NCBI GenBank assembly: GCA_047495785.1
Contig: JBLDXI010000001.1
Span: 3,100,001 to 3,164,000, forward strand
DNA length: 64,000 nt
Direction: 5' to 3'
DNA from: Lepidodermella squamata
Lineage: Eukaryota; Animalia; Gastrotricha
This document shows positions 33,077-56,185 of this stretch, piece by piece. The translations under genes were made by a program, and so were the position numbers. The notes under the pieces were generated by a model. The model saw only the letters and a list, made by a program, of their open reading frames with translations. It searched no databases and was not told where the DNA came from. How positions within the stretch are numbered: position 1 is the first letter of the stretch; each line of letters begins with the position of its first letter.

Positions 33077-35537
33077 ATGAGTGGTGTCGCAGTGGCTGCG
33101 AAGCTGGCAACTGCGCAATCGCGGCAATTTAATAATAACAGCGCCGCGCTAGCTGCTAACAAGCCTGTTATTGTTATCAGTAGCGATTGTGGCAGCGCGC
33201 AATTGACGCCGAATTCGCGCGTCAATACCAATAACAACCAGAATAACGGCAAAAGTGTGCGGTACATACAGATGGGTAGTCGACAGGACGCGAATTCGGC
33301 TTTAAGCCTGGTCAGTGGTGGGGCTGGCGATGCGAAAAGCGTGTCTAATTTGGGCGACTTCGAGCCGAATAATAATAACAATGAAGTGTTTCAGTCCAGA
33401 CGTGGTAGCGATCTTCCATCTCAAAGGTAAGGATTCAGGACATTTTAAAAATTACTTTCTGTTTTTGCTCATTATAAGTGGAAAAATCCCATGGTATCGA
33501 ATTTCCAACTTTGCCAAACATTTATTTATTCTTCTAATTAAAGAAAACCCAGGATTTTTGCTTCAATAATATCTATGAAAATTTAGATTGGTTGTATATA
33601 CTCTCCATCTTGACTCATATGTTTTATATTGAAATTTGAGAAAAAAAATCAGGGTTCTAGCGCTAAATTTGAGGCTCCGGCACCTACTAATTTGCCCACA
33701 ATTTTTTGACCTACTTTCGAATTTAACCAATTTTTTACTGATGCCAACAACGAATTGGAAAAAAATCACCAACCAATACATTAAAAATCGGGTTTTTAGC
33801 TTGAGAAATCATCCCAATGAGGGCCCTGTGAGAGTCCAAATTCTCAGATCTTCAAAATTTATCTGAAAAAACGAAAACAATCACCCCAATTTTGGTAATC
33901 GGTTTAGGGTGATTTTTTCTGGTATATGTATACTAGTTTGCTGGCGGTCGAATAAGTAAGGTCTGCTAATTGAATGTTTTGCAGCTTCGGAACCTTAAAA
34001 TCACCTGAAAGTTAGCCCTGGATCTTCAATTTTAATACTACCTATACAGGGTGTTCAAGAAATAATAGGTAGTTATAAATAGGATTGCTACTTTTGGCAC
34101 GCGCTTTAGCTGAACAACTGCCTATTATTTCTTGAACACCCTGTAGTGAAAACTGAAATTCAAAATTTGATGAGAAATTATGGGGACGTAATTACAAAAT
34201 CTCATCAAGAATGAGTATAATCTCATCATTCAGCCAGATCCGCCCAATTAAAATTTTTAATTTTTAATTTTTTCAGGAGTTACTTGGGTTGCTCGAGTCG
34301 CTACTCGCAAAGCCGATCGAACAGTTTGCTCAACAATCGGCCGAGCACAACCGGCCACACTACAACAGCGCCGCCTCCCTCAATATCGAAGCACCAACTC
34401 TACTACAACCGCGTACTCAGCGGCCGTATGAAGCCGGCCGTCGACGAGATGTACGCAAGGAGCCAGCGCATGAGCCTCATCGAATCGATAAACCGCGGCC
34501 TCTTCCAACACACGATTTTCATCCTGTCATGCCGGCCCGACGACATCCACAGCCGAGATGAGCGGCAACGCACCCCCTTAATGCTATGCGCCTATATCAG
34601 CGATACTCAGTGGCGCGTGTCGATGGCTCGAACTTTGCTACAAAATGGAGCTGATCTTCACCACAGTGATATCCAGGGGAAAACCGCGATGCATCATACC
34701 TGTGAGTTGGGAAGGTCGGAGCTATTGACCCTACTGCTCAAAGCAGGCGGTCACGCTCTACTGAACCGGCACGATTCGACCGGGAAAACGCCGGTTGATT
34801 ACGCTAAATTCGACCGGTTATGTTCCAGGGTGATTGAAGAACATTCGCCGGGCAGTTCGGCGATCGAAAACGCGAAGAGGAAGCTGAAACTACGGCCGAA
34901 ATCAGCCGCAGCCTCCTTAATGACCACACAGGCGCCAAAATTGGTTCAATGGAGCGTTTTCGAGCAGAAAGGCCGCGTGCCCAGCTTAATCGACGCGCTG
35001 CCTTTCGTGTCAGTTTTGCGGGAAAATTTGGATGTTCAAAACGTGGACGACGGTGATTTGCCGACTTCGACGTGTTATTACACCAAGGATCAATTAGCGC
35101 AACGTCGGCGGCATAGTGCGCACCCTGTGGCGCCCTCGAGTGCCCTGGGTGATCTGACAACAGCTTTTGATGGGAAGTCTCACATTGCGACGTTGTTAAT
35201 GATGCATGGCGAGCAACAGCTAGCCAGTTTCCGGCCGACTGTCAAGCCCAGTGAGCAGCAGGATGCGATGTTTAGGCTGTTGCGGGCCACCCTGGAGTCG
35301 CAGCAGCAGTCGACGGAGGAGAGCCTGGCCGGGTCGAAGCAAAAGGTACGTAGCACGCCCAGTGTTGCTGCGGACACCCCGCTTCCCCTGAAATCGCCAC
35401 TGAAAAATAATGTCCCCATGTGTTTTTGCGTTGATTGCGCTGAAAAAATGCTTGCTACCTGGAACAACCTTAATAGCAGCAATAACGCAAAAAATGGCCA
35501 TCATACGCCTTTGCATCATACTAATAGCTCATCATGA
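33077..35537 (+). CDS. Ankyrin-repeat protein (ANKRD34/ANKRD63-like architecture); exons 33077-33426 and 34277-35537
   Basis: A phase-2 intron AG|GTAAG (33427) ... TTTCAG|G (34276) joins the ORFs in frame. Ankyrin motifs RTPLMLCA, LLQNGAD...GKTAMHHTC, GKTPVDYA; long low-complexity flanks. Confidence 0.8.
34047..34143. mobile_element. 97-bp Tc1/mariner-type MITE in the ankyrin-gene intron
   Basis: TA|CAGGGTGTTCAAGAAATAATAGG ... CCTATTATTTCTTGAACACCCTG|TA: perfect 23-bp TIRs and a TA target duplication. Confidence 0.9.
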
Positions 35538-36305
35538 ATTTTTGAAATTTTCGATTCATTCGCGCGATTTTATTTTTCGAATATTTTTCCAGAGATTTAT
35601 TTTTGAGGTGGTGTTAATTTTTATTTTAATCTACCTGAAATGATAATTCTTCAGTCGAAGCTATCAAGTAATATTGTGCACAATTAAAACGCGCTGCTTT
35701 CTAGTCGAAAAAACTAGGCTGTTTGCTGTTGTTTTCTCGTGTTTTCATTAGCGTGTAGCCCGAGTGCGATTTTACTGTTCCGATCGAACGAAAAACTGCT
35801 GCAATAAAACTGCGATAATTTTAGAGAGTGTTTTAATTTATATATTATATATAACCTGAAATTAATTAATGAGGTTTGTGCGTGATGTGATAAAGAAAAA
35901 GAGGTCAAAGGCAGCGTCCAAGGTCGAAAGTCAACGCACGTCGCGCATTGACAGCAGCCAGCGGTCATCGAGCCGCTTATCAACATTCACGACAGATTCG
36001 AGCCGATATTAACCCAAGGTTGAAAAAATGAAAAAATTCGTCACATTCCAGCACAATTATTTTCGAATCGAATTTCACCTGCAATTAATTTTAATTGTTT
36101 ATAATTATTTAAAAATGCACAAAACCAGCCATCTGGTGGCGGCAATATGTTGGTAGGTCATCTACGTGAGACGTGTTTCGTGTGAAAATTTTATTAATTT
36201 ACTGAATTATATTTTTTTGTAAAATTGTTGTAAAATTATTTTTTAATTTCTTTCAATTAATTTTCGCAATTTTTAATATTTTTTTCATGAAATTTTCAGA
36301 CAAAA

Positions 36306-36665
36306 ATGTTCAGCGCGAAATTGTTGGCGAAATCGATGTTGCAACGGCACCGGGCTGGTTCAATCAGCTCGAACGTGAGTCGCACCCAACTTCACCGGTT
36401 ACGTTCAAATGTCTCGGAGAGTGTGACGAGCGAGGACGAAGGCGCGCCGCCGCTCTATTCGGCTACCTCGACTTCATCGTCGTCTGGGCACAGCCACGAC
36501 GCCAGCACGAGTTTTGTGACGGCGCCGCCTCGAATATCGCTGTCGAGCGGTGGGTTGCTTTCGCCGCGCAATAGCATCGTACCGGCCGCAACGCAAGTCA
36601 CTCCGAGCCACATTCACAACCCACTACAACCCACTACAAGCAATAGTGCAAGCAATAACTTATAA
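36306..36665 (+). CDS. Small Ser/Pro-rich, probably disordered hypothetical protein (119 aa)
   Basis: GC-rich island in AT-rich context, preceded by the acceptor TTTTCAG (36299) and AAAATG, followed by AATAAA (~36796). No recognisable domain. Confidence 0.45.
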   Translation: MFSAKLLAKSMLQRHRAGSISSNVSRTQLHRLRSNVSESVTSEDEGAPPLYSATSTSSSSGHSHDASTSFVTAPPRISLSSGGLLSPRNSIVPAATQVTPSHIHNPLQPTTSNSASNNL

Positions 36666-37339
36666 CACCTCGATATAGTTGAATTTTTTATGAAAATTAT
36701 TTGTGGTCTGTGAGATTCCCGTAGCTCATCTGTTTGTTTAATAATTTAACATTTTTATCGTGGATGTAATTTTGAAAATGTTGGGAATTTTCGAAAATAA
36801 AATTGTTTATTGACTATTTATTCTCTAGTGAATTCTTTCATCCATCCAGAGTTTAACGATTAATATATGACTGGCAAGAATGAAAATCTTCAGAAAAGCT
36901 AGATTTACTTCATTTCCCAGCACCCTGAATTTTTAGGGTTCGAACACACAATTTCCGCAGGCTGTTTTGAGCTTTCAGTGCGAAGAGCGAACATCGAAAT
37001 TTGTTACCCTTCCTAATTTTTATTGCGGGTGAGTAAAGTCCCTCCCCAAAATTAAAAAGTTGTTGTTTATCACTGTAATAAGAAACCAGTATCGCCTTTA
37101 TTTTCAATCGACTCGAACTACGAAACCTGAGTATAGACAGCGAAAAAGCTTTCTAAAAACTTTTAGCGCTTGAAATTCTAGTAAAATTGACCTGTCGATG
37201 AGTTCCGGAGCCTGATTTCACCCACATAGGTATCGCATTCATATTATTGCAAACATAATGCAAGGGCGAAAAATCGATTGTAAACCTCAGATATGAAAAT
37301 GCTTGAATAAACGCATTTGAAAAAAACCATAAGTACACC

Positions 37340-40300
37340 ATGATAATAGGTGTATTCGCTACTTTTTTGGTAATTTTATTAAGCGCCAGTGTGACCTTGG
37401 CGCAAAATGACCAGATTCGTCGAAAAAATGGTACAGTCGCTATGCTGGCGCTCATACCGCAAAATGACGATTTCTACGGGCCGGTATGTCGCGAGGCGAT
37501 TCAACTCGTCATCGACAAGATCAACCGAGCGACTAATGTCCTACCCAACGACTATATCGAAATAGAATACGGCAATGATCAATGCGATGCGAATGTTGGG
37601 GTGAGCGAATTCTTTCGGCTAACCCGTCTGAAGAAGAGACCAAGTGCTGTTCTGATCGGTTCAACATGCGACAACGTTTGCGAATCAGTCGGAGTGCTGC
37701 CGCATCTATTCTCGATGATTGAAGTCGCCGCAGGGTGTGCCACGCCTGTAATCTCACCCGGGCCGCTGTACTATGCATTCCACCGAGTTGTCACGCCGCA
37801 AGATCTGATATCCCGTGTTCGATTCTGGTTCATGAAGCTAATGAAATGGCGATATGTTGCTGTTGTAGCTGAATCCCGCGATTTAACCATGCGTGACGCT
37901 GTCAACTTCGTCAGAGCTGCGACGCCTGAAGGAATATCGATTACCTCCACTGAAATATACGCCGAGGCCGATATAGCTTCTGTGGTTAAACGATTGAAGC
38001 TGGCCAGCCCGCCTGTCATCCTACTGAATTGCGGCCCATCAACTTGCCACGAATTTTTATGCCAGGCCTTCAGAGTAAAACTCTACGGCCCTGAAGTCGT
38101 TTTTATCCTTAACAACTGGGTCAGAATTGATGTAAATCGCTCGTTCACCGATTGCAGACCTCAGGATTTAGCTGAAGTAGTAGATGGCGCGTTATTCATG
38201 GGGAGCATTAACGAAGACCCAGACGTCTTCACCACCTTGGGCTACAACTTATCTACATTTGACCAAGAACTAATTCAGAGACTGAATGGTAGTAACAAGC
38301 GACCGGCTGCGTGGGACGACCGAACACTATGCCACGATGCTGCTTTATTCGGCGCCCACGTTCTTCACTACGCTAATATCGACATGAGACAAGCAAATCG
38401 ATCGCTAGGAAACTTTTCGGCGAAAGATCCTAGTGTACTGCCTTTCATTATGTACGCTGCTAAAAAAGTTAACGTGATTGGGCTGAGAGGTCGTCTGAGT
38501 TTGACCCCAAATTACACGCAGGAAATGCTGACAACTATGGAGGTTGTTCAAATTCAAAATGGAACGAAAAAGCGGGTTTTCCTCTACTATCCTAACAATG
38601 ATCGAGACCCCAAAGTTTTCGCGCCTTTAAAATGGAAAACGTCGGATGGGAAGGCTCCTACAAACACTCCACCCCCAACGGTTTCAACAGCCCGTTATAC
38701 CTATCCTACATTTTCTTATGGTGCATACACGCCTACTACAACAACAGTTCGAAGTACGACTACAACACCGAGACCTACTACACCTGATCCGCCTGGTCCG
38801 AAGAATAAGACTGCGACAGTCTTCATGCTTGCAATGGTGCCTCAGGACTTGACCAGTAACGGGCCTGTTTGTCGGGAGGCGATGCAGCTAGTCATCGATA
38901 AGATCAACACGAATCCTGACATACTCCCCGGGCATAAAATAGACATCGTTTACGGGAATGACCAGTGTGATTCGCTTACTGGGGTTGGTGAGTTGATGCG
39001 TTTGACCCGTCTTAATCGTCCGGCGAGTGCTGTGCTGATCGGACCAACTTGCGATAATGTCTGCGAATCGGTCGGAGTTCTGCCACACATGTTTTCAATG
39101 ATTGAGGTAGCAGCTGGATGTGGAACTCCGACGGTTTCACCCGGGCCGCTTTACTTCTCCTTTCACCGAGTTACAGCTCCGCAAGATCTGATCGCCCGTG
39201 TTCGATTTTGGTTCCTCAGCCGGATGAAGTGGCGTAGGGTTGTAGTGGTCTCGGAAATACAAGAAAACCTACAACATGACACTGTCAACTTTGTCAGAGC
39301 AGCATCATGGGAAGGCGTTGAGATCTTATCGGTTGAGTTCTACTCCTCAGACCCTGCGCCTGCCGTCAATAAACTCAAAGCTTCTGATCTAGCTGGTGTA
39401 GTTATTCTGAATTGCGGACCAGCTACATGCGCCAACTTCTTCTGCGAGGCCTTCAAAGCGAAATTGTATGGCAATGTGGTATTCATAATGAATAACTGGG
39501 TTAAGCTTGACTTCAATCAATCGAGAACTGATTGCCGATCTCAAGATCTAGAGAAAGTCATCGAGGGGGCACTATTTATGGGAAATATTAAGGAGGACCC
39601 TGAAGTCACTACGTCTCTCGGTTACAATCTGACAGGCTTCGACCAGGAACTTGGTCGTCGGCTTAATGGCAGTACGAAATGGCAATCTTGGGAGAACAGA
39701 GCCTTATGCCACGATGCAGCTTTGTTTGGAGCGAACGTCTTACACCACGCTGAAATCGGCATGCGACGCGCTAATCGGAACATAGCGAACTTTTCGTCAA
39801 AAGATCCAACAGTTTTGCCATTTATTATGGACGCTACGAAACGGGTAAACACAGTTGGCTTGCGTGGTCTTCTTCGAGTGAGCCCGAATTACACGCAGGA
39901 AATTCTCACAACGATGGAAGTTGCTCAGATGCAGAACGGTAGTCTGACTCGGGTTTTCTTGTACTACCCAAACGGAGATCGGCAGCCTAAAGCTCTTGCG
40001 CCTCTGAAGGTGACGTGGGCCGATGCATTTCCTCCAATGAGGAGCACTGCGTCAACGGCTCGTTACACCTATCCGACTTTTCCTCCAAATATGTACACAC
40101 CGCCTACCCCTAAAACCACACCTAGAACAACAACTACCCCAGCACCTACCACAATTGATCCCAACGCCCCGAGGAACAAGTCTTTAACCGTTTCTTTACT
40201 TGCTTTAATTCCTCAATCGACTCCGGTTTGCCGGGAAGCGATACAGTTTGTGGTTGATAAAGTGAATGCTAATCCTTATGTCCTACCTGGCTATAAAATT

Positions 40301-42759
40301 GCCATCGAATATGGAGATGATCAGTGTGACTCGGACGTTGGAATCAGGGAGTTCTTTCGCCTAACTAAACTGAACCGCGCTCCAAGCCCTGTTTTGATCG
40401 GATCAACGTGCGATAATGTCTGCGAATCGGTCGGAGTTCTGCCGCATTTGTTCTCCATGATTCAAGTAGCTGCAGGCTGCGGCACTCCGACGATTTCCCC
40501 CGGCCCTTTGTACTTTGCTTTCCATCGCGTTGTTACCCCTCAGGACTTAATATCAACAGCAAGGTTCTGGTTGCTTAGACGATTCGGCTTAACAACAGTC
40601 GCTGTGGTCGCAGAATACTCCGAAGTAATGCAAAGAGATGCCATCAACTTTGTAAAGGCCGCATCTGGATGGGGCGTCTCTGTTTATGACACAACGCTTT
40701 ATGATATCAAAAACGGCGGGCTGGTTGGACCCTTGAAAAAGATAAAATACAAAGGCATTCAAGTCTTTCTATTCTTCTGCTCTGCAGCAAGTTGCCATAA
40801 GCTGTTCTGCGATGCGTTCAAAGCTCGTATCTATGGTCCGAGATACGTCATCATCTCCAACGATTGGATCACATTGAACTCAAGTGATTCGTCAACCTCC
40901 TGCCGATCACAGGATCTCGAAACCGTCTTCGAGAACGTTATTCTGATCGGGCCGGTTCGTGAGATCACTGACCCTGGGCTGATAACTACCTATGGCTACA
41001 CCCCCGCGGAGTTTGATGTCGAACTAACTCGCCGATTGAACGGTTCGAAAAACAGCTCGAAAGATTGGCAGGACAGAATTTTATGCCATGATGCAGCCAT
41101 GTTTGGAACGAGGGTACTTCACCATGCCGAGATCTTGCTACGTCAAGCAAAGCGACAGATTTCGAACTTTTCCGCAAAAGACCCTACTGTCTTACCATTT
41201 ATCATGTCAGCGACTAAGCAGGTCCGTTTGTATGGATTGAGGGGTTACCTAGCCCTGACCCCTAATTACACCCAAGAGATGTTAGAGCCGATGCAAGTCT
41301 CACAAATTCAAGGCGGTAAGACAGTTCGAAACTTCATCTATTATCCAAACGATGACCGCAATGCACGAGAGTTCTCGCCCATTAAATGGAGCGCGTTAGG
41401 CAAGTATAGTTTCACCTTGAACTCCTTATAAAATTTATCTTTTTGCAGATGGAAATCCTCCAGCCTTGAAAGCTCTAGACAAAACGTACAATGTAACTTT
41501 GTTGGCTCTTATCCCTCAAAACGGAACTTTTATGGGTCAAATCTGTCGCGAGTCCATCCAAATCGCCATTGATAGGATCAATGAGATGCAGGAACTTCTT
41601 CCGACTCGCAAAATCGAGGTTCTCTATGGCAATGACCAATGCGACCCTGTAGTTGGCTCGAAAGAGTTCTTCCGCCTGCTGAAAATGAAGAGAATGTCAA
41701 CCCCAGTTATCATCGGTTCAGTTTGTGAGGACGTTTGCAGATCGATTGGCACGCTACCGGGGAGTTTCAACATGCTGGAGATAGCAGCAGGTTGCTCGTC
41801 ACCTCTTATCAAACCTGGGAAAGGATATTCGTCTTTTTTGAGGGTTGAAACCCCACAGCATTTGGCCTCTGTAGCCCGGTTTTGGCTCTTCAACAAAATG
41901 GGCTGGAAACGAATTGCAATCCTTGCTGAGGAGGATAATTCACTGTTAACCAACGACCTGTGGTATTTTTACAACCAATCATCAAGCCAGGGTTTATCTG
42001 TCATCTCAGCCGAGTTCTACAACAATCGGAATATGGCTGAGAAGATACAAAATCTCAAGGCGAAAGACGCTAAGGTTGTTATGTTGAACTGCGGACCTGC
42101 AACCTGTAACCAGTTCTTCTGTGAGGCCTACAAATCGGGATTTTACGGCCCTCAAATCGTTTTTATTCTCAACAATGGCGTTAAGCTGGACGCATCTGGT
42201 TGCGGTAAGGAGGCTATGGAGGGTGCTTTAATGATTGGAACTATCAAAGGCCCGAATGAGCCGTCTTGGATGACTCATTTAGGATATTCGGTCGAAGAAT
42301 TCGACGCCTTGTTGAGGGGCCGAATTGACGGTGAAATCAACGAGGAAGCTTGGCAAAATCGAGCGCTATGCCACGATTCAGCTGTATTTGCTGGCCATGT
42401 CCTTCACTTGGCTGAGATTTACCTCCGATTGAAGCAGAAGGATGTTAGAAGTTTCAGCATGACTGATCCAGCGGTTCTTCCTTTGATCCAAGAGGCGGGC
42501 AAAAAAGCTAGGATTGTTGGTCTACGTGGGCTATTGACGCAGAGTAAAGATTTTCCTGGCGAAATGCTGCTCCCGATGGAAATTTCGCAGTTCATCAATG
42601 GCAAGGTGTCAAGGGCTATGATTTACTACCCAAATAATGATAGAGAGCCTGATTATCTTGCTCCTATTGATTGGAGGGGTTAGTTTTAAATGATTTTGCT
42701 CTTTATTCCGCATATCACAATCTAATTTTTTCTCAGGATCGAAGCCACCTATGGACTAG
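37340..42759 (+). CDS. Predicted secreted protein of four tandem GABA-B/ANF-receptor-type Venus flytrap domains, no 7TM (~1770 aa); exons 37340-41399, 41449-42678, 42737-42759
   Basis: Signal peptide, then four repeats of CRE(A/S)xQxxxD(K/R)xN...LP...YG(N/D)DQCD...FC.A(F/Y)K...YG...CHD. A GC-AG intron (41400-41448) restores W.x.x.DG.xP; the last exon gives WRGSKPPMD-stop, the motif that precedes the stalk/7TM in GABA-B receptors. AATAAA at ~42909. Confidence 0.85.
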
Positions 42760-44489
42760 TCACTTTTCCCATTCAACTGACCATATCTAGCTTGAACTTT
42801 GATTTAATTCAAAATATTTTTCGTTGTGCTACTTTTTCGGTAATATATAAAATTAGAAAATATATATTATTGGAAGTACTGTCAGTGGAACGTCACCTTT
42901 AATCTATAAATAAACACATTCGTTGCATTGAATCATAATTTTTCTCCACTCTCGTCGACTTCAGTTATTTTCGTATGTCTGAACTTAAAGCCTGGAATAT
43001 GCTACGGTATATTGAAAAGATTGCCAAATCACATGTGTGAGAGAGAGAGAGAGAGAGAGCGCATGAATCGAGGTTGTCGGGTCATTGCGATGCGTGAGAA
43101 ATAAAATAAATTCTCTTGCAATGAAAAATTCCGCAACAGGCGCGCAAACATTCAACGATGCCTTAAACATTCAACATATAATTCCTCCATAGAGATTTTA
43201 ATCTCCGGCTCGGAAACCGCATCAGCATCATCATCGTCAAATAAGCAACGACTTTATTCATCTTCCGGAATGCGTCCCAATTTTGCGGCGGCGAGGGCTC
43301 GCAGGCCTTAGATATTCGGCCAGGCGGTTCGTGACTACGTACACCGGGCGGTCAACTGTTACGTACTCTAATTTCGGCCGCTCATAAACAGCCAACTCGT
43401 ATTTCGGTCGTTTAAATGAAGCCTGGGTGATGGTTCGGTCGTAAATTACCAGTGTAGGTAGGGCGGCTTTTGAAATGGTGTCGCAGTCATTGCTGAGCGT
43501 TCAAATTCGACCAGAACATACTTGGGACGATCATCCACAGCCAGGCTTGTAGGTAACTGGCGTTTTAATCCAACGCCGCCACCCGACATTACGTAAAATG
43601 TCTAGTTATAACACGAAGGACACCAGAAATTTAAAATAAAAGATGCGTTTTAAATAAAAAATCTGATCACTAGCGAATTGAAAATTCGGTTTTAATACGC
43701 GGTGGAAATAAAAAGACGACGACAAGTAGCAAATAAAAATACCTAATACGGCTAATATAAAGTGATTCAGCCCCAAATCGTTCTTAATTTTTATTACCTA
43801 AACCCATAATTTTCAAACAGCGCCGCCGTAAAAATGTTCAAGTTTTCAGAATTTCCAAAACGATCGTTATCTATTCGAGGGCGTGGCGAGGAGATGTGAC
43901 GCTGACACAACCCGGCTGAAACGGAGAGGTAAACCCACTCTCCTCGCTGTACCACCTGTATTTCGCCCTCCTTCACGCATCAACAATGGATGAAGATTTA
44001 TATTTGAAATAAAAATTCCGAAAAATTCCAAAACGTTTTTTCGTATTTTTTTGTAAATTTCACGAACATTTTTATTTTAAATAAATTAAAATTTTTTAGA
44101 AAGTATGACACCTGCGTCGACGAAATCGATCTTATGCTACTGGTTGCTCTTGAGCTGATCCAACGATGTCAAAACCAGACTGCGGCTGTTGGCGAGGGCC
44201 AAATAACCAAATTGCTATCAGCTCGATGGCGAAAAGCTGCCGCAGCTGCAACTTGAGTAGTCGCCGACGAAGTTTTGTTTGGCTTTAAATTCGACGGAGG
44301 CGCCGCTGTTCTCGGCGATAGACGCGTGGAGACGACCGATTTAGCCGCGGTCAAATCGATGTACCAAGCGAACCGACCGATTACGCCGCCGCAATACTCT
44401 TTGAAAGCGCCGTCTGTGAATTTACATGGTGCGCCACAGCGTATCGAGCCGCCGCAATCTTCGAGTTGCGATTACTGACGAAGGATCGC

Positions 44490-44848
44490 CGTCGATAACC
44501 TCGCGGTCCTGAAAATAAATGTTTAAAATCGGTTGAAATTTTGATTTCGAGTAAAATTTACGGTCATGTCATCTTCGTAGCTGAAATCAAACACCAATTT
44601 CTGGCCGAATTTCATGGCGTGGATCACTCGGTTTTCATAATCATTTGAAAAAGCGTATTTTTCGGGGGTCGATCTGCGTTGTTTTCAGTTCGAAGTTTCA
44701 AACGCTCTTGGTGCGCTTTCTGACGCTCAGCCTTCTTCTTTTCATCGTTGATTCGGGTCAGCTCTTTTTTGCGAAAAAACGAATGCATTTTCGTGCGAGC
44801 GCCCTGAGACCGACAGGCTGGTAACTGCAGCCACTGGTCAGTCGTAAT
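44490..44848 (-). pseudogene. TRMT10C: Frameshifted, intron-containing fragment of mitochondrial RNase P protein 1 / tRNA m1R9 methyltransferase
   Basis: Minus strand reads ITTDQWLQL...FFRKKELTRINDEKKK...KNTLF (frameshift) RVIHAMKFGQKLVFDFSYEDDMT | intron 44509-44561 | DREV. This resembles the TRMT10C segment AMQFGQPLVFDMAYENYM as I recall it; similarity is lost after that. Confidence 0.7.
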
Positions 44849-45861
44849 ATTTTAAGCATCTTTAAATATTAATTGAGTTGTGATATTGATATCTCACTAT
44901 TAGTTTCCCAAGCTTCACGGAAAATATATCTTGGACAAATAATTAGTAACAGGTTATGATTATTGGCCCTCAATCGGCGCCATTAACAAACAGATATAAG
45001 TATACGTCAATCAGGAATAATAAAACCTGAACTGCACGCAACAGTAAAAATGTATCTAACTCTAGCAGCCAGATTGGTAGTTTGTGCTGTGAATTGGCGA
45101 AACTAATCAATTCCCCGAAAACCGAAGTAGGTACACAGTACACACTTCAATGCGGTCAAATCACAGTCAATTCAACCACCACAATCACCACGGAGTCTTG
45201 AGCCAGCTAAAAGCTCAGGGACAGTATGATTTCTCGCAAAATATCCATCCACCGTAAAAAAGCATCTTTTTAAGGCTGACCACGTGACTAATATCAGCTT
45301 TTAGTTTTGAACCGTAATATCAACAAAATTATTTTTATTCTTTATATTATGTTTTTTATTCTAATGCTCAACATGTTTTGTTTTGGCGGGAATTTTTCAA
45401 ATTTTTGAAAATTTGGAGCAGACCATCGCTTTGGGACCATGTCAGCTGATTTGTCGCTTTTCGAAATTTTCTCAGTCAGCGATGAATTTCCGGCAAGTTG
45501 AAAGCCAGGCAATCATCAGCCTTCTTGCTGAAGTGAGTTTGCGCATACATAGAACTTGAACGCGATTTCCTTCGATTTGTTGATAGGATGCTTTACCGTC
45601 AAACATTCTGGTTCTTGGACCATCTAGCTCGGGAAAATTTTATACTGTCGAACATTGTTCTGTTTCAAACGCTTTTGGATCTCCAAGCAAAATCGGCAAT
45701 AGAAACAACAGCAATTCTATTCCTTGCCGCTGTACTGGAATTCCTATCTATAGCTTTCTAAAATTGTTAGAAAAATACTTATTTTCCGTTTTTAAGCCTG
45801 TGTGGATTTCTGACAGCTCCCGATCTCCGGATGAAAACATTGGGTCTATTGATTCATTTAG

Positions 45862-46505
45862 GATTTCTCCTTCAGTCTTGTTTGTCCCTCAATCGCCAAA
45901 TCAGTCGATAAATCAGAAGATCGACTGACTCTGATTCGGCCAAACCGGCGAAGCGAGGTCGTGGTCGCCCAAAGAAAGCAAAAGTCGATCAACAAGCAGC
46001 TATGGCAGATCCTGCGAAAGGTTTCATTCTTCAATCTGCCGCTGAATCGGTAAACGACCTTGACAACAACGAACCTGAAACTCAAGCAAAACCGAGAAAG
46101 CGTGGTCGCCCGAAAAAGATTCTGGTTGCACTCAGTTCGATGTATCGACGGGTGCTGCATCTCATTCTGCTACCGCTGAAGAAGACCTCGCAAACCCTTC
46201 CGACCGTCTAATATTCAGGCCTGTTGGCGCGGATTGGCAAATCGAGGCTGTTGAAGTGCTTGGTTGCGATTTAGTCGAGGCCCACAGCGAATTCGATGAA
46301 CGAGATCCTGTGAGTATTTCCAGGACCCAAGCCCCTGGCGAAGTTCTACCTACCGAGGCGACCGGATCCTGCTTCTTCCAAGCTGCAGGGTATTTCATTG
46401 CTGGCTCGAACCCGCTCAATGACAATACAGTTGCAAGCAAAGTAAGTATAAATAAATATCTTTGTACTTTACATGTTATAATAATTTTCTTAGCTTCGAG
46501 ATATG
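45862..46505 (+). pseudogene. Disrupted transposon-associated ORF with an AT-hook and an OTU-like protease start
   Basis: KPRKRGRPKK (AT-hook); VLPTEATGSCFFQAAGYFIAG...|intron 46442-46493|LR resembles OTU xxGxCxFxA...LR; frameshifts and a stop. Confidence 0.45.
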
Positions 46506-46567
46506 TGACCACGTGGGAGTCAACAATTCTATTTTTCTCCCTGTAAACTACAAGAGCAATGCTAAAC

Positions 46568-46857
46568 CAGGGGCGTAACCAGGAATTTTTTTTGGTAGTT
46601 GTTATGGATCTGATAGTGAAATTTTCATTTTTCTCAGGATAATCCAAAGTCGGAAAGCGCCGATTTTCAATAGGAACTATTGACAATGTCGGGATTTCGA
46701 GCGAAGCGAGAAATTTTTTGATAATTTTGCCAACATTTCGTCTACTTTTTAAGCTATTTAAGCCATTTTCTCCAGAAAATAGGTCGAAGAGGGGTTTTTG
46801 AGTTTTCATTTTGGTAGTTGTTTGAACAACCAAAACAACCAGCTGGTTACGCCCCTG
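46568..46857. mobile_element. hAT-type MITE (290 bp)
   Basis: 15-bp TIRs CAGGGGCGTAACCAG / CTGGTTACGCCCCTG, flanked by the 8-bp TSD TGCTAAAC (46560-46567 and 46858-46865). Confidence 0.92.
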
Positions 46858-47729
46858 TGCTAAACGCTATTTATCCGCGAAAAGAATGCGAAAGTTGTCG
46901 TCGTTTGCGACCACAGTCGAGGTGCAAGCCATGTCTGATATGTTCAATGTACCGATTTACATTTTTGCCACTACGAACCGGTGATTTCAATGTAATATAG
47001 TTGATGAGGTTAAAATGAGATGAGAGAGTAATAAAAAAAGTTGAAGAAGCTTGATAAATGCTAAAAAACCTTAAACTATACCATGGAAGTTTATACTTAT
47101 TACTTATCCCATTACTTGTAAGTGCATAATAACGACTTGAAGGTCACATTAAATATCGGATACCATGCATATGATAAGGTCTAATGTCAAAATGAAATAC
47201 ATGTCACGACTCAGGACACGATGTCACACAGGTCTGTCAGGTGTCACGAGGGTCCGTTGTCACATGGTCTGCCAACTTCCTAAAAGCTGGTCATTTTGGA
47301 ACTTGGCAGACCACCCCATGTGGAGCCATACAATTTTGATGCCATTCGATGTGACACGAAAGTCACCTTAAGAAAATCATGTGTCACACTACATTAAAAG
47401 CTGGTAATGCTTGTCCGTTGTCAGTCACAGAACATGGTCTGCCAAGTTCAAACACGTCATCGACCTTGTATTCCAATCAACTTTTATTGCATTTTCAGTA
47501 ACAAAATAAAATAAAATATATTTTTCTTTAACAGTAATTAGAATTGTGAAAAGTCGGTAGTTTTTTCAGCGGCGGCGAGGCGAATAGTCGGACTTAGAGG
47601 GTTAATACGTTTATTACTTGATATTTTCTAGATTGCCTGCTCCGCCCCCGCACTTGTTGCAGTGGTACCTCGCCTACCCCAGCCCGCGCCATCATTGCTA
47701 GCAGCCCCTGTCGAAGGGCCTTGGTAAAT

Positions 47730-49002
47730 ACCGAATTCACTTTTGTCGACTAAACGACGACCCCTCAAAGTTCTTGACGGCTATATGTATCGTCATGCCT
47801 ACCTAATGGAGAATGGTTCTTCGACTTACAGATGCAACAGTTCAATCTTCTGCAAGGCTAAATTGCGAGTAGGCGCTGATGGCGGGATTTTTCAAAGCCA
47901 GTCGCCAGTTCATTTCGGCGGGATCGACTTTTTACTTTTTACTGCCCTACACGTTCTGATTGGACGTCATCATTAGGTCAGATCAACAACTTTAAGGATA
48001 GTCCATCTCTTGAAATAATATGGCAAGAACAATCTTTCTCATCGTTTTCTTGTAGAATAGAGTGTATATTTGTATGATATAGTACGAGTATTTTATTTAT
48101 ATCTGAGATTCGTAGCACGAGATGACCAAATCGAGTGCGGAGAATCCAGATAGGAATGAATTACGAGTGCTATATCGTAAAATATTGCATGAGCATGGGT
48201 ACTAACAAAAATTGAGAGTTGCGTCTCGTCAACAAAAAGTGAGTAATTTAAAAGTTTTAAAATTTGATTAAATTACTATTCGAGGAAGCCACATGTGATT
48301 TCGAAACTGGACTCTTAGCTGCTCTAAAGAAGCTAAAAGGGCGGAACGGCCAGTTCATCCGCATTATCAAGTGTCATTTCCATTACAGCCAGGCACTCAT
48401 AAAATGGCTGCGTGATCATGGGCTAATTAACTACTACCGACGCAATTCGTCCTTCCGAACATTCATACGGCGATTTATGGCTTTACATTTTCTACCCCTA
48501 GCCGCAGTGAAAGCCGCCGCTTAGCTCTTGTGTTCCACCGCGCCGCCAATTTTGGCTGAATTTGTTGAATATTACCGGAACACCTGGCTTGAGAAGTTCG
48601 AGCCCGAGATCTGGAACGTTCATGGCCGCGACATTCGAACTAACAACTTGGTCGAGTCGTGGTATCACAGAATAAATTGCAAACTAATCGCGCCCCATCC
48701 AAGTTTTTGGAAATTCGCCGAGCTTCTGATCGGCGAGGTTGCATCTATCGACTCTATTGATCTCTATTGATCTATTGATCTATTGACATTAGTTGTTGCA
48801 ACAGGCCGGCGGCCAGAAATTGGGTCTAACAGAAATCGAGAAGAAAAATGAGGCCATAAGTTTCATCACCGTGCAGTATAACAGCTCAATGAATATTCTT
48901 CAAGAACAAAAATTGGACGCTTTAAGCCATTCTTTCCGCTTGCGTGCAATTACAATCGATTTCCTTGTTGGCATCGGCGTTCACTTATGCGACTTGATTT
49001 AA
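47730..49002 (+). mobile_element. Degenerate Mutator-like (MULE) transposase with FLYWCH-type zinc finger
   Basis: 47743-47915 has LDGYMY...TYRC...CKAKL...H (FLYWCH-like). 48290-48770 has CDFETGL...KCHFHYSQA...FIRRFMALHFLP...FVEYYRNTW...IWNVH...RTNNLVESW, typical of the MULE DDE C-half. In-frame stop at 48522; the middle part is missing. Confidence 0.85.
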
Positions 49003-49419
49003 ACAAATCTTGATGATTTTCTCTTCTTCGCCTTGTTTCAATTTAGTTCACTTACTGATGAAAAGTCGCAACCTATCCAGCTTCAACCACTTGTCCAACA
49101 GCCCATTCAATTAAGCCCCACCTATTATTACGGTTCTGCCCTTTATTATTTCACATGATCATCACCCTCTGCCCTTTATTCCGGTTCTGCCCTAAATTTC
49201 GATCCTGCCTAAATATTCGTAAAATCGGTAGATTTCTTAAATTCAGCGTAATTCAAAGAGCGACCTTTTGCTTATCTAAATTAGGTTCCGCAACATGCAC
49301 AATTAATTCCCCAAATTCATTCATTCAATGCCAAATCCCGTGAGGGACATACAGCCCACGACATATTTTCGTAGTTCATAGGCAGAAAACAGATAATACA
49401 GGTAGTTCAGATAGAGCAG

Positions 49420-52751: not shown

Positions 52752-55700
52752 TGTTGGTAGGTCATCTACGCGAGACGTTTTTTGTGTGCGAATTTCATTA
52801 ATTTAACTGAAATATAATTTGTTTGCAAAATTGTTGTACAATTATTTTTTAAGTTAATTTCCATTTTTACACAATTTACAAATCAAATGCAATTTTTTTA
52901 GAAATTTTTCAAATTTTTAGAGCGAAACAGTTGGCGAAATCGATGTTGCAACGGCCCCGAGCTGATTCAATCAGAGTCGCACCCAACTTCACCGGTTACG
53001 TCGACTTCATCCAACACTGAATATCCCCGAAACAGTGTACTTTGAATTTTCAGTTCGAAGTGCAAATTTGTATCCCTTTTTAATTTTTATTGCGAATGAA
53101 ATCCCTCCTCAAAATTGGAAAGCATTTGTCTATTGCTGTAGAAACGAATACCGCCTTGTTTTAGAACTACGAAACCTGAGTGCAGTTAGCTTTCTAAACA
53201 CTTTTAGCGCGTGCAATTTTAGCTAAATTGACCTGCCTATGAGTTCCGGAGCCTGGTCTCACCCACATAGGTATCACATTCATATTAATACAAACATAAT
53301 GCAAGGGCGAAAAATCGATTGCAAACCTCAGATATGAAAATGCTTGAATAAACGCATTTGAAAAAACTCATAATTACACCATGATAATAGGTGTATTCGC
53401 AACTTTTGTCGTAGTTGTTTCAAACGCCAGTGTTACCTTGGCGCAAAATGACCAGATTCGTCGAAAAGAGGGTACAGTCGCTATGCTGGCTCTCATACCG
53501 CAAAATGACGATATCTATGGACCGGTATGTCGCGAGGCGATTCAACTCGTAATCGACAAGATCAACCGAGCGACAAATGTCCTACCCGGCCTCCATATCG
53601 AAATAGAATACGGCAATGATCAGTGCGATGCAAATGTTGGGGTGAGCGAATTCTTTCGGCTAACCCGTCTGAAGAGAAGACCAAGTGCTGTTTTGATCGG
53701 ATCCACATGTGACAGCGTTTGCGAATCAGTCGGAGTGCTGCCGCAACTATTCTCGATGATTGAGGTTGCCACTGGATGTACCACGCCAACTATCTCACCC
53801 GGGCCGCTTTATTATTCATTCCACCGAGTTGCCACGCGGCAAGATCTGATATCGCTAGTTCGAATCTGGTTCATAAAGCTAATGAAATGGCGATATGTTA
53901 CAGTTGCAGCTGAATCCAGCGATTTAACCATGCAAGACGCTCTCAAATTCATTACTTCCTTTCACATTCATCTTGATAACATATTTACTGACCATTCTGA
54001 AATATACAACCCTGATGATACAGCTAGTGTGGTTGAACGATTGATGATGGCCGACTCACGTGTCATCCTACTGAACTGCGGCCCAGCAACTTGCCATGAA
54101 TTTTTATGCCAGGCCTTCAAAGTCAAACTCTACGGCCCTGATGTTGTTTTCATCCTCAACAACTGGATCACAATTGATGTCAACAACTCGTTCACGGACT
54201 GCAGACCTCAGGATTTAGCTGAAGTAGTAGAAGGTGCATTGTTCATGGGGTCCATTACCGAAGACCCTGACGTATTCACCACCTTGGGCTACAACCTATC
54301 TACATTTGACCAGGAACTTATTCAGAGACTGAATGGCAGTAACAAATGGCATGCTGCTTGGGTCAGCCGAACGCTATGCCACGATGCTGCTTTATTCGGC
54401 GCCCACGTTCTTCAACAAGCTAACTGGGACATGATGAGAGAAAATCGATCGCTTGTATGGGACTTTTCTGTGGAGGATCCTAGTTTTCTGCCTTTCATCA
54501 TGTCCGCTGCTAAAAAAGTTAACGTGACTGGGCTGAGGGGTCTTCTAAATTTGAGCCCATCTTACAAGCAGGAAATGCTGACAACTATGGAGGTTGTTCA
54601 GGTTCAAAACGGGACGAAACAACGGGTATTCCTGTACTATCCTAATAATGATCGAGACCCGAAAGTTATCGCGCCTTTGAAATGGAGAACGTCGGATGGG
54701 AAGGCCCCTTCAGACTGTTGTACCTTTCCCACAGTGCGAAGTCAGACTACAACACCGAGACCTACTACACCTGATCCGCCTGGTCCGAAGAATAAGACTG
54801 CGACAGTCTTCATGCTTGCAATGGTCCCTCAGGATTTGACTACTAACGGGCCTGTTTGTCGGGAGGCGATGCAGCTAGTCATCGATAAGATCAACACGAA
54901 TCCTGACATACTCCCCGGGCATAAAATCGACATCGTTTACGGGAATGACCAGTGTGATTCGCTTACTGGGGTTAGTGAGTTGATGCGTTTGACCCGTCTT
55001 AATCGTCCGGCGAGTGCTGTGCTGATTGGACCAACTTGCGATAATGTCTGCGAATCGGTCGAAGTTCTGCCTCACATGTTTTCAATGATTGAAGTAGCTG
55101 CTGGATGTGGAACTCCGAAGATTTCACCCGGGCCGCTTCGCTACTTCTCCTTTTACCGAGTTACAGCTCCGCAAGATCTGATCGCCCGTGTTCGATTTTG
55201 GTTCCTCAGCCGGATGAAGTGGCGTAGGGTTGTAGTGGTCTCGGAAATACAAGAAAACCTACAACGTGATACTGTCAACTTTGTCAGAGCAGCATCATGG
55301 GAAGGCGTTGAGATCTTATCGGTTGAGTTCTACTCCTCAGACCCTGCGCCTGCCGTCAATAAACTCAAAGCTTCTGATCTAGCTGGTGTAGTTATTCTGA
55401 ATTGCGGACCAGCTACATGCGCCAACTTCTTCTGCGAGGCCTTCAAAGCGAAATTGTATGGCAATGTGGTATTCATACTGAATAACTGGGTTAACCTTGA
55501 CTTCAATAAATCAAGAACTGATTGCCGATCTCAAGATCTAGAGAACGTCATCGAGGGGACACTATTTATGGGAAATATTAAGGAGGACCCTGAAGTCACG
55601 ACGTCTCTCGGTTACAATCTGACAGGCTTCGACCAGGAACTTGGTCGTCGGCTTAATGGCAGTACGAAATGGCAATCTTGGGGAAACAGGACATTATGCC

Positions 55701-56131
55701 ACGATGCAGCTTTGTTTGGAGCGAACGTCTTACACTACGCTGAAATCGGCATGCGACGCGCTAATCGGAACATAGCGAATTTTTCGCCAAAAGATCCAAG
55801 AGTTTTGCCATTTATTATGGACGCGGCGAAACGGGTAAACACAGTTGGCTTGCGTGGTCTTCTTCAAGTGAGCCCGAATTACACGCAGGAAATTCTCCCA
55901 ACAATGGAAGTTGCTCAGATGCAGAACGGTAGTGTGACTCGGGTTTTCTTATACTACCCAAATGGAGATCGGGAGCCTAAAGTTCTTGCGCCTCTGATGG
56001 TGACGTGGGCCGATCCATTTCCTCTGAATATGTCCACACCGCCTACCCCTAAAACTACGCCTAGAACAACAACTACCCAAGCACCTACCACAATTGATCC
56101 AACAGCCCCGAGGAACAAGTCTCTAACTGTT
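52752..56131 (+). repeat. Segmental duplicate of ~36148-40191, with deletions
   Basis: TGTTGGTAGGTCATCTACG at 36148 and 52752; a deleted remnant of the Ser-rich ORF at ~52920-53010; upstream region and CDS colinear up to AACAAGTCT.TAAC.GTT. Confidence 0.9.
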
Positions 56132-56185
56132 ACTGTTACTGTTACTGTTTTTATTGTGGCATTTTTTTCAACATTTAGCAATTAG
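53381..56185 (+). CDS. Two-domain Venus flytrap protein (934 aa), truncated paralog of 37340-42759 with a novel hydrophobic tail
   Basis: Intact single ORF with a signal peptide; domains 1-2 colinear with the first gene; ends SLTVTVTVTVFIVAFFSTFSN. Confidence 0.8.
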   Translation: MIIGVFATFVVVVSNASVTLAQNDQIRRKEGTVAMLALIPQNDDIYGPVCREAIQLVIDKINRATNVLPGLHIEIEYGNDQCDANVGVSEFFRLTRLKRRPSAVLIGSTCDSVCESVGVLPQLFSMIEVATGCTTPTISPGPLYYSFHRVATRQDLISLVRIWFIKLMKWRYVTVAAESSDLTMQDALKFITSFHIHLDNIFTDHSEIYNPDDTASVVERLMMADSRVILLNCGPATCHEFLCQAFKVKLYGPDVVFILNNWITIDVNNSFTDCRPQDLAEVVEGALFMGSITEDPDVFTTLGYNLSTFDQELIQRLNGSNKWHAAWVSRTLCHDAALFGAHVLQQANWDMMRENRSLVWDFSVEDPSFLPFIMSAAKKVNVTGLRGLLNLSPSYKQEMLTTMEVVQVQNGTKQRVFLYYPNNDRDPKVIAPLKWRTSDGKAPSDCCTFPTVRSQTTTPRPTTPDPPGPKNKTATVFMLAMVPQDLTTNGPVCREAMQLVIDKINTNPDILPGHKIDIVYGNDQCDSLTGVSELMRLTRLNRPASAVLIGPTCDNVCESVEVLPHMFSMIEVAAGCGTPKISPGPLRYFSFYRVTAPQDLIARVRFWFLSRMKWRRVVVVSEIQENLQRDTVNFVRAASWEGVEILSVEFYSSDPAPAVNKLKASDLAGVVILNCGPATCANFFCEAFKAKLYGNVVFILNNWVNLDFNKSRTDCRSQDLENVIEGTLFMGNIKEDPEVTTSLGYNLTGFDQELGRRLNGSTKWQSWGNRTLCHDAALFGANVLHYAEIGMRRANRNIANFSPKDPRVLPFIMDAAKRVNTVGLRGLLQVSPNYTQEILPTMEVAQMQNGSVTRVFLYYPNGDREPKVLAPLMVTWADPFPLNMSTPPTPKTTPRTTTTQAPTTIDPTAPRNKSLTVTVTVTVFIVAFFSTFSN

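What the first reader, a model, noticed from the sequence alone, without database searches (positions are those of the whole stretch)
37340..42759. Secreted 'string of four Venus flytraps' derived from a GABA-B-type ectodomain
Seen: signal peptide, then four complete flytrap domains (~37430-38660, 38810-40020, 40180-41460, 41480-42756). The first three are joined by Thr/Pro linkers sharing STARYTYPTF. The ORF stops right after W.G..PP.D, followed by a polyA signal, and no 7TM, cyclase or channel follows. The Ser-rich ligand motifs of GABBR1 (GCSS, YGSSSP) are replaced by TCD(N/S)VC/VCEDVC and AGC(A/G/S)(T/S)P. Known: class C GPCRs, iGluRs and receptor guanylyl cyclases carry this domain once, attached to a membrane effector. 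Inference: a soluble multivalent small-molecule binder (carrier, scavenger, decoy or mucus component), analogous to AChBP for Cys-loop receptors.
Basis: partly seen in the sequence, partly recalled or inferred. Interest (0 to 1): 0.82.

Follow-up and report, generated by a model that had tools for sequence, protein, structure and literature searches.

The report
Secreted protein of four GABA-B-type flytraps
An unidentified small-intron animal has an intact, selected and probably transcribed gene for a secreted protein made of four complete receptor-type "Venus flytrap" ligand-binding domains in a row with no membrane or signalling part, most likely a free-floating multi-pocket binder for the still unknown ligand of a sister receptor family.

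Summary
At 37340-42759 (+) lies a three-exon gene. It encodes a signal peptide, then four complete ANF_receptor/Venus-flytrap domains. Domains 1-3 are joined by Thr/Pro-rich linkers that share STARYTYPTF. The protein ends ...WRGSKPPMD*, about where TM1 starts in its nearest receptor relative.

By sequence and by fold the best matches are GABA-B R1 and R2 ectodomains. I found no 7TM sequence anywhere in the 64-kb window. One probable-RNA contig splices the last intron exactly as predicted and runs past the stop codon. The domains differ at 36-55% of residues, with saturated dS and low dN/dS, so they are old and under selection.

The only close public relative (50-60% identical) is an ordinary flytrap+7TM receptor. 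It shares the unusual pocket: Asp/Glu where 67 of 69 related flytraps have Ser/Thr.

The soluble multivalent-binder reading fits the sequence, but no binding or secretion has been tested.

Undescribed tandem-flytrap 7TM receptors exist in protist data. A 7TM-less flytrap protein (SmGBP) is published.

Earlier notes of this scan record secreted flytrap-only genes elsewhere in this genome. None of the notes I retrieved describes a four-domain chain.

A truncated two-domain duplicate lies at 53381-56185.

The parts
37340..37402 (+). Predicted signal peptide MIIGVFATFLVILLSASVTLA, with likely cleavage before QND
   Evidence: It is the only 19-residue stretch above the Kyte-Doolittle 1.6 threshold (2.48) in the whole protein. 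Small residues sit at -3 and -1. The paralogue and the receptor relative P0001 also start with a hydrophobic leader. No signal-peptide predictor was available.
37340..41399 (+). Exon 1: signal peptide, flytraps 1-3 and two mucin-like linkers
   Evidence: Open frame. ANF_receptor x3, E 1.5e-71.
37424..38662 (+). Flytrap domain 1
   Evidence: tblastn, alignment A1. AlphaFold2 model has pLDDT 94.4 and pTM 0.92. Foldseek TM is 0.86-0.89 to open GABA-B R1/R2 ectodomains.
38663..38803 (+). Linker 1, Thr/Pro/Ser-rich, contains STARYTYPTF
   Evidence: Translation; 58% T+P+S.
38804..40024 (+). Flytrap domain 2 (64% identical to domain 1)
40025..40174 (+). Linker 2, Thr/Pro/Ser-rich, contains STARYTYPTF
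   Evidence: Translation; 54% T+P+S.
40175..41399 (+). Flytrap domain 3 (56% identical to domain 1)
41400..41448 (+). Intron 1, 49 nt, GC..AG (inferred)
   Evidence: The frame changes between the two ORFs. The ends are GCAAGT ... tttttgcag. Splicing restores the conserved W..DG.PP motif. One DNA haplotype has a 2-nt deletion inside it. No RNA contig covers it.
41449..42678 (+). Exon 2: flytrap domain 4 (45% identical to domain 1), joined to domain 3 by only about 12 residues
   Evidence: ANF_receptor E 1.4e-29. GABA-B R1 E 1e-25.
42679..42736 (+). Intron 2, 58 nt, GT..AG
   Evidence: Sequence. A contig of run X1 skips exactly these 58 letters, with 25 letters on its shorter side.
42737..42759 (+). 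Exon 3: (G)SKPPMD then stop TAG at 42757-42759
   Evidence: It contains no GT, so it offers no alternative donor before the stop.
42909..42914 (+). AATAAA polyadenylation signal
   Evidence: An X1 contig lies at 42806-42856, and X1 depth is zero after 42913.
53381..56185 (+). Paralogue B: truncated duplicate with signal peptide, flytraps 1-2 and a short hydrophobic tail
   Evidence: ANF_receptor x2. Translation. The duplication joins 36148-40200 to 52752-56140. dN/dS against gene A is 0.37-0.41.

Best explanation
Gene A (37340-42759) encodes a secreted, heavily glycosylated protein of about 1,770 residues. It consists of a signal peptide and four complete bilobed Venus-flytrap domains of the GABA-B receptor type. 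Flytraps 1-3 are spaced by mucin-like, probably O-glycosylated Thr/Pro linkers of roughly 50 residues. Flytrap 4 is attached closely, by about 12 residues. The chain ends roughly ten residues before the point where TM1 begins in the nearest receptor relative. I infer that each flytrap still closes on a small ligand. That ligand is not GABA. The pocket is the one used by a sister subfamily of orphan GABA-B-like 7TM receptors, with an acidic Asp/Glu in place of the near-universal carboxylate-binding Ser and a Cys-x4-Cys loop in place of Tyr250. The protein would therefore act outside the cell as a multivalent buffer, carrier or decoy for that receptor family's ligand, a return to the free binding-protein role of the bacterial ancestors of this fold. 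Shown here: the architecture, its completeness, its ancestry, purifying selection, the absence of a membrane part, and one spliced contig at the 3' end. Inferred: secretion, glycosylation, ligand binding and the physiological role.
For: Four ANF_receptor domains and no other Pfam family. The profile of the domains hits GABA-B R1 at 1.3e-33, R2 at 2.5e-22, and T1R/mGluR only at 1e-12 or weaker, over almost the full domain length. The domain 1 model has pLDDT 94.4 and superposes on open GABA-B R1/R2 ectodomains at TM 0.86-0.89. The only hydrophobic segment is the N-terminal leader. Each domain has exactly 10 Cys, and there are 24 N-glycosylation sequons. No 7TM was found: tblastn with ten 7TM queries, including that of the closest relative, gives only noise in all 64 kb. 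The ORFs between genes A and B are reverse transcriptase. No open stretch has two or more TM-like segments except the antisense of that element. An X1 contig splices 42677/42736 (58 nt, GT..AG) and continues past the stop to 42771; another lies in the 3'UTR; depth is zero beyond the AATAAA. Domain 1 against domain 2 gives dN 0.27 with dS saturated and dN/dS about 0.06. The other domain pairs give dN 0.37-0.55 with dS unmeasurable. The closest relative P0001 (50-60% identity) is signal peptide + flytrap + TM1, followed after a short GT..AG intron by a 7tm_3 exon. P0001 shares the pocket motifs. The S130-equivalent is D/D/D/E here and D in P0001, but S or T in 67 of 69 other GABA-B-like flytraps.
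Against: No ligand, binding or secretion has been shown. The RNA evidence is one low-depth contig with 25 letters on its shorter side, below the tool's own 31-letter rule, from a run whose RNA nature is only a guess. Intron 1 and the 5' kilobase have no RNA cover. GBR2-type flytraps bind no ligand, so an intact fold does not prove a working pocket. Domain 4 differs at several pocket positions: E for D, G for Trp278, E at the His170 position. No orthologue with the four-domain layout was found in any public collection searched, so conservation of the layout across species is unknown.
Confidence: 0.55

Rival explanations
1. A receptor-associated subunit rather than a free binder. The soluble flytraps dock onto the flytraps of membrane GABA-B-like receptors, or onto flytrap-less 7TM partners. 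They would then deliver ligand, cross-link receptors or silence them, as class C flytraps dimerise by nature and as bacterial binding proteins dock onto chemoreceptors.
For: Class C flytraps are obligate dimers (established knowledge; GABA-B R1/R2 structures are the top fold matches). The pocket is shared with a 7TM receptor relative. Earlier notes of this scan report a very large family of orphan GABA-B-like receptors in this genome (unchecked).
Against: Nothing here tests an interface. Four domains on long glycosylated linkers are not needed for a one-to-one partner.
Confidence: 0.2
2. A structural or adhesive matrix or mucus glycoprotein in which the flytraps act as protein or glycan interaction modules and no longer bind a small ligand.
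For: Mucin-like Thr/Pro linkers and many glycosylation sequons. The GABA-binding residues are lost.
Against: The cleft-lining motifs (TCDNVCESVGVLP, AAGC.TP, LCHDAALFG) are the best-conserved parts of all domains and are shared with a 7TM receptor. That pattern points to a conserved pocket.
Confidence: 0.15
3. The gene model is incomplete. The four flytraps are the ectodomain of a membrane receptor whose 7TM or anchor exons lie outside the window or are used in another isoform.
For: Predicted tandem-flytrap 7TM receptors exist in protists.
Against: The stop follows ...PPMD directly. Exon 3 has no GT that could serve as a donor. A contig reads exon 2, exon 3 and the 3'UTR in one piece. An AATAAA follows. 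A retroelement and a second gene with its own signal peptide lie downstream. There is no 7TM in 21 kb downstream or 37 kb upstream.
Confidence: 0.06
4. A decaying relic or assembly artefact of a tandem receptor array.
For: The neighbouring copy B is truncated and evolves faster: dN/dS about 0.4, and its domain 1 sits on a longer branch.
Against: About 1,770 codons are open, and every domain keeps 10 Cys. dN/dS between domains is far below 1. An independent DNA run holds 99% of the sampled words, and its contigs cover the whole stretch, including two contigs without a single difference across 40414-41406 and 41466-42470. The domains are 36-55% different, so they cannot be collapsed or duplicated reads.
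Confidence: 0.04

Closest known systems
GABA-B receptor subunits (class C GPCR; human GABBR1/GABBR2, Drosophila GABA-B R1)
   Same: The flytrap fold and sequence family match: profile E 1.3e-33 and fold TM 0.86-0.89. There is no cysteine-rich domain between the flytrap and the next part. The domain-closing motif W..G..PP.D is kept.
   Different: There is no 7TM and there are four flytraps instead of one. The residues that hold GABA are changed: S130 to D/E, S153 to A/G/S, H170 to V/T/E, Y250 to G/S, E349 to D/N. Sequence identity in the structural alignments is only about 18%.
P0001, an unnamed flytrap+7TM receptor on an ENA metagenome contig (L001)
   Same: It is 50-60% identical to the four domains. 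It has the same TCD.VC / AGCGTP pocket motifs, the same cysteines and the same W.T.DGK.P end motif, and it comes from a genome with similarly short introns.
   Different: It has one flytrap followed by TM1 and a 7tm_3 exon, so it is a normal receptor.
SmGBP, truncated mGluR-like glutamate-binding protein of Schistosoma mansoni (PMC3206071)
   Same: It is a class C-derived flytrap with no 7TM, expressed as its own full-length mRNA, and it binds its ligand (abstract).
   Different: It has a single flytrap of mGluR type and is tightly membrane-associated. It is not a four-domain chain and not GABA-B type.
AChBP of molluscs (secreted homologue of the Cys-loop receptor ligand-binding domain)
   Different: The fold is unrelated. 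AChBP gains valency by forming a pentamer of single domains, whereas here four domains are chained in one polypeptide. The function of the present protein is untested.
Tandem-flytrap proteins: bacterial BvgS/EvgS sensor kinases (PMC4352136, PMC5573083) and undescribed 2-3x ANF_receptor + 7tm_3 proteins of Rhizamoeba, Flabellula and metagenomes (P0094, P0045, P0034)
   Same: They carry several flytraps in series in one chain.
   Different: All are anchored to a membrane signalling module. BvgS/EvgS are described in those papers as periplasmic sensor-kinase flytraps, a family I did not compare by sequence here. The protist proteins are only distantly related (E about 1e-23 to 1e-28) and have not been studied.

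Membership tests
ANF_receptor / class C GPCR Venus-flytrap domain (PF01094), GABA-B branch | Match to PF01094 above the gathering score, for each domain | tested here: met
   Exon 1 scores 241.7 bits in 3 stretches; exon 2 scores 103.7 bits; the cut-off is 25.4.
ANF_receptor / class C GPCR Venus-flytrap domain (PF01094), GABA-B branch | Complete bilobed fold closest to GABA-B ectodomains | tested here: met
   The profile aligns at positions 6-388 of 407 to 4mqe_A residues 6-389. The model has pLDDT 94.4, and the top 36 Foldseek hits are all GABA-B R1/R2 at TM up to 0.89.
ANF_receptor / class C GPCR Venus-flytrap domain (PF01094), GABA-B branch | No cysteine-rich (NCD3G) domain after the flytrap, as in GABA-B | tested here: met
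   Pfam reports only ANF_receptor and Peripla_BP_6.
Class C GPCR (receptor proper) | 7tm_3 heptahelical domain in the same gene | tested here: not met
   No 7tm_3 in the gene. No TM-like segment after the leader. No 7TM similarity anywhere in the window.
GABA-binding GABA-B R1 | GABA-contact residues S130, S153, H170, Y250, W278, E349 (GBR1b numbering, from my knowledge of the 4MS3 structure) | tested here: not met
   The aligned residues are D/E, A/G/S, V/T/E, G/S, W (G in domain 4) and D/N.
7TM-less soluble or peripheral flytrap proteins (SmGBP type) | Flytrap encoded as the whole mature protein with its own stop and polyA signal | tested here: met
   Stop at 42757, AATAAA at 42909, and a spliced contig that reaches the 3'UTR.
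7TM-less soluble or peripheral flytrap proteins (SmGBP type) | Demonstrated ligand binding | not testable with these tools
   Needs recombinant protein.
Secreted protein | Cleavable signal peptide, no anchor, disulfide and glycan signature | tested here: inconclusive
   Hydrophobic leader and TLA|Q site, a hydrophilic C-terminus, 10 Cys per domain and 24 sequons. No SignalP, GPI predictor or proteomics was available.
Mucin-type linker | Thr/Ser/Pro-rich repetitive segments | tested here: met
   Two segments of about 50 residues with 54-58% T+P+S and a shared STARYTYPTF. O-glycosylation itself is not testable here.

The most novel reading that the evidence does not exclude
A new class of animal extracellular binding protein: receptor flytraps chained four to a polypeptide and released into the perireceptor space or body fluid. 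It would work with a large orphan GABA-B-like chemoreceptor family as a ligand shuttle or buffer, the class C counterpart of odorant-binding proteins or AChBP. It would bind a non-amino-acid ligand, possibly a cation or an amine, through the acidic residue that replaces the universal pocket serine.
Probability: 0.3. Interest if true: 0.8.

Novelty: new variant of a known kind. Interest (0 to 1): 0.6.

Why it matters
Class C receptors (GABA-B, mGlu, taste, calcium-sensing) are built on one flytrap per subunit fixed to a 7TM. A natural, selected protein that chains four such domains and drops the membrane part shows that the module can return to the free binding-protein role of its bacterial ancestors. 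It also gives a soluble, expressible handle on the ligand of an orphan, greatly expanded GABA-B-like receptor family that has been proposed as chemoreceptors in several early-branching or small invertebrates. The shared acidic pocket residue makes a testable prediction about ligand chemistry. Finding the ligand of the soluble protein would probably de-orphanise the sister receptors.

Tried and rejected
Both word-index protein searches with exon 1, once whole and once restricted to residues 28-440, found nothing. A third search with domain 1 alone found only P0001. The metagenome contig scan gave one distant locus at 23% identity. An exact look-up of the 1363-aa ORF product found no record. The ESM Atlas feature search returned only single-flytrap clusters. 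A paper search for tandem flytraps found only the bacterial BvgS/EvgS/CdgH cases.

I considered three alternative junctions for intron 1. A GT donor at 41394 with the acceptor at 41448 breaks the frame. A GT donor at 41394, or the GC donor at 41400, with a weak acceptor at 41463 keeps the frame but loses the conserved DGNPP motif. I kept GC-AG 41400-41448 because it has the only strong polypyrimidine acceptor and restores the motif.

I rejected the possibility that the ORF at 49761-50399, which has three hydrophobic stretches, is a 7TM remnant. It has no Pfam hit and lies antisense to a reverse transcriptase.

I did not fold a two-domain piece, because the tool returns no coordinates or contact information from which packing could be judged.

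All searches used exon 1, exon 2 or single domains by reference.
Full report
**Observation**

The stretch 37340-42759 is not one ORF. It holds two long ORFs in different frames, 37340-41431 and 41466-42683, plus a 23-nt last exon.

Reading the DNA gives two short introns:
- Intron 1 is 41400-41448, 49 nt, with ends GCAAGT...tttttgcag.
- Intron 2 is 42679-42736, 58 nt, with ends GTTAGT...ttctcag.

After splicing, the domain 3/4 boundary reads ...PIKWSAL-DGNPPALKALDKTYNVT..., and the C-terminus reads ...PIDWR-GSKPPMD-stop (TAG at 42757-42759). AATAAA follows at 42909-42914.

Every search used exon 1, exon 2 or single domains by reference.

**Domain content**

Pfam finds ANF_receptor three times in exon 1 (E 1.5e-71) and once in exon 2 (E 1.4e-29). 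The only other family reported is the related Peripla_BP_6.

tblastn with domain 4 finds six flytrap copies in the window. Four are in this gene, at 37424-38638, 38804-40006, 40175-41389 and 41451-42677. Two are in a second gene at 53381-56185.

Domains 2, 3 and 4 are 64%, 56% and 45% identical to domain 1.

The two linkers, roughly 50 residues each, are 54-58% Thr+Pro+Ser and both contain STARYTYPTF. Domains 3 and 4 are separated by only about 12 residues.

Each domain has exactly ten cysteines, and there are 24 N-glycosylation sequons. The only segment above a membrane-helix hydropathy threshold is residues 2-20, which ends in TLA|QN and looks like a signal peptide.

**Ancestry and fold**

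A profile of the six domains hits solved chains in this order:

| Target | E-value |
|---|---|
| GABA-B R1 (Drosophila 9jqx_A) | 1.3e-33 |
| GABA-B R1 (human 4mqe_A) | 8e-31 |
| GABA-B R2 | 2.5e-22 |
| T1R3 | 1.5e-12 |
| mGluR1 | 1.8e-10 |

The human R1 alignment runs over profile positions 6-388 of 407.

An AlphaFold2 model of domain 1, built on a 76-row alignment, has mean pLDDT 94.4 and pTM 0.92. Its 36 best Foldseek matches in the PDB are all GABA-B R1 or R2 ectodomains. TM is 0.86-0.89 to apo or antagonist-bound (open) forms and 0.70-0.75 to agonist-closed R1.

So each unit is a complete GABA-B-type flytrap, modelled in the open state.

**Absence of a membrane part**

- The gene has no 7tm_3 domain.
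- tblastn of the whole 64-kb window used ten 7TM or C-terminal queries, including the 7TM exon of the nearest relative. It gave only chance-level hits at E up to 10.
- A hydropathy scan of all open stretches of 60 or more codons downstream of gene A and of gene B (42760-53380 and 56186-64000) found one candidate, 49761-50399. It has no Pfam hit and lies antisense to a reverse-transcriptase element at 49424-50960.
- Exon 3 contains no GT, so no alternative donor can bypass the stop.

**Read evidence**

Run X2 is DNA and holds 99% of the sampled words. Its contigs cover the entire stretch, including two contigs without a single difference across 40414-41406 and 41466-42470. It also contains the paralogue's version, so the tandem domains are not an assembly artefact. 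One X2 haplotype has a 2-nt deletion at 41405 inside the proposed intron 1, which fits non-coding sequence.

Run X1 is labelled "RNA?", which is only a guess, and its depth is low.
- It has small contigs over parts of domains 1-4.
- One contig skips exactly 42678-42735/6 (58 nt, GT..AG) and continues to 42771, past the stop codon.
- Another contig lies at 42806-42856 in the 3'UTR.
- Depth is zero after 42913.

The limits are real, though. It is a single contig with 25 letters on its shorter side, under the tool's own 31-letter rule. Intron 1 and the first 1.0 kb of coding sequence have no X1 cover.

**Selection**

Domain 1 against domain 2 gives dN 0.27 with dS saturated and dN/dS about 0.06. 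For the other domain pairs dS cannot be estimated, and dN is 0.37-0.55. The repeats are old and have been kept under purifying selection. That rules out a recent artefact or a decaying array.

**Relatives**

The exhaustive profile search of 1.84 billion representatives found 1,540 hits but only one close one, P0001 (499 aa, E 1.7e-187). The next hit is at 6e-42. The word-index searches agree.

P0001 is 50-60% identical to the four domains. It lies on an ENA metagenome contig and consists of signal peptide, flytrap and TM1. A short GT..AG intron follows (about 64 nt by my reading), then an ORF with 7tm_3. It is therefore an ordinary receptor from a similar small-intron genome.

In a maximum-likelihood tree the topology is (D4,(P0001,(D3,((D1,B1),(D2,B2))))). 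Support is 94/94 for P0001 grouping with domains 1-3 to the exclusion of domain 4. Either domain 4, which has its own exon, is older than the split from that receptor lineage, or it has evolved faster. Domains 3, then 1 and 2, arose by later internal duplication.

**Pocket**

I mapped the GABA-contact residues of human GBR1b (numbering from my knowledge of the 4MS3 work) through the HMM alignment and the 76-row alignment:

| GBR1b residue | Domains 1 / 2 / 3 / 4 |
|---|---|
| S130 | D / D / D / E |
| S153 | A / G / G / S |
| H170 | V / T / V / E |
| Y250 | G / G / S / G (inside a Cys-x4-Cys loop) |
| W278 | W / W / W / G |
| E349 | D / N / D / N |

The S130 position is Ser in 62 and Thr in 5 of the 69 other GABA-B-like flytraps. 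It is Asp in P0001.

So the ligand is not GABA, and the unusual pocket was inherited from a receptor subfamily rather than invented by the soluble protein. An acidic residue at the site that normally binds a carboxylate suggests a ligand without that carboxylate, perhaps an amine or a cation. That last point is inference.

**Mechanism**

The best reading (about 0.55) is a secreted, glycosylated, four-pocket binding protein. It would capture the ligand of the sister receptor subfamily in the extracellular or perireceptor space, as a buffer, carrier or decoy.

The rivals are:
- a receptor-docking subunit that pairs with membrane flytraps (0.2);
- a matrix or mucus protein whose flytraps no longer bind small ligands (0.15);
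- an incomplete gene model with distant 7TM exons (0.06);
- a relic or artefact (0.04).

**Comparison with what is known**

The protein belongs to the ANF_receptor family on the GABA-B branch. It is not a class C GPCR, because the 7TM was looked for and is absent.

A 7TM-less class C flytrap has been characterised: SmGBP of Schistosoma mansoni, an mGluR-type, single-domain, membrane-associated protein (PMC3206071).

Flytraps in series are described for the bacterial sensor kinases BvgS and EvgS. I also found them in undescribed predicted proteins:
- 2x ANF_receptor + 7tm_3 in transcriptomes of the amoebozoans Rhizamoeba saxonica and Flabellula baltica;
- 3x ANF_receptor + 7tm_3 in a metagenome cluster of eight members;
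- 3x ANF_receptor without 7tm_3 in Cymbomonas.

I found no protein, described or predicted, that combines several class C-type flytraps with secretion and no anchor.

Earlier notes of this scan, which I did not check, report many orphan GABA-B-like receptor arrays and several secreted flytrap-only genes on other pieces of the same genome. The scan has met soluble flytraps before in this animal. None of the notes I retrieved describes a four-domain chain.

**Verdict**

I class it as a new variant of a known kind and score interest at 0.6.

Noticed in passing
window 53381-56185 (+), duplication 52752-56140: This is a truncated paralogue of the four-flytrap gene. It has the same leader and flytraps 1-2. 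It breaks at the first residues of domain 3 and ends in a hydrophobic tail, TVTVTVFIVAFFSTFSN*. Divergence is mosaic: the domain 1 part has dS 0.32 and 80% aa identity, while the domain 2 part has dS 0.07 and 94% identity, which suggests later gene conversion. dN/dS is about 0.4. Its linker 1 lacks STARYTYPTF. One X1 contig end matches sequence just after its stop.
   Followed up: partly
window 17280-28050 (+): Five tandem ORFs of about 380 aa each match Neur_chan_LBD and Neur_chan_memb (Cys-loop channel subunits), upstream of the flytrap gene. Other readers have already noted them.
   Followed up: no
window 49424-50960 (-) and 59355-61523 (-): Reverse-transcriptase (RVT_1, DUF6451) retroelement ORFs lie between the two flytrap genes and after the truncated copy. 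The second may mark the event that truncated paralogue B.
   Followed up: no
P0094, P0045, P0034, P0101, P0089 (public proteins): Predicted receptors carry two or three ANF_receptor domains in series before a 7tm_3 domain. They occur in Rhizamoeba saxonica and Flabellula baltica transcriptomes and in metagenomes. A 3x flytrap protein occurs in the green alga Cymbomonas. I found no paper describing this architecture in the text search.
   Followed up: partly
alignment A2, column of domain 1 residue D83: The pocket serine that is S or T in 67 of 69 GABA-B-like flytraps is Asp/Glu in all six flytraps of this window and in the 7TM receptor P0001. This marks a distinct receptor subfamily with a probably different ligand chemistry.
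   Followed up: partly
window 41400-41448: The only frame-preserving junction that uses the strong acceptor needs a GC-AG intron (AG|GCAAGT). No RNA contig covers it.
   Followed up: partly
window 36148-36665: A Ser-rich ORF (36306-36665), entered by an apparent splice acceptor, looks like the last exon of the upstream ankyrin-repeat gene (34284-35537). Its first part was copied along with the flytrap gene, to 52752-53001.
   Followed up: no
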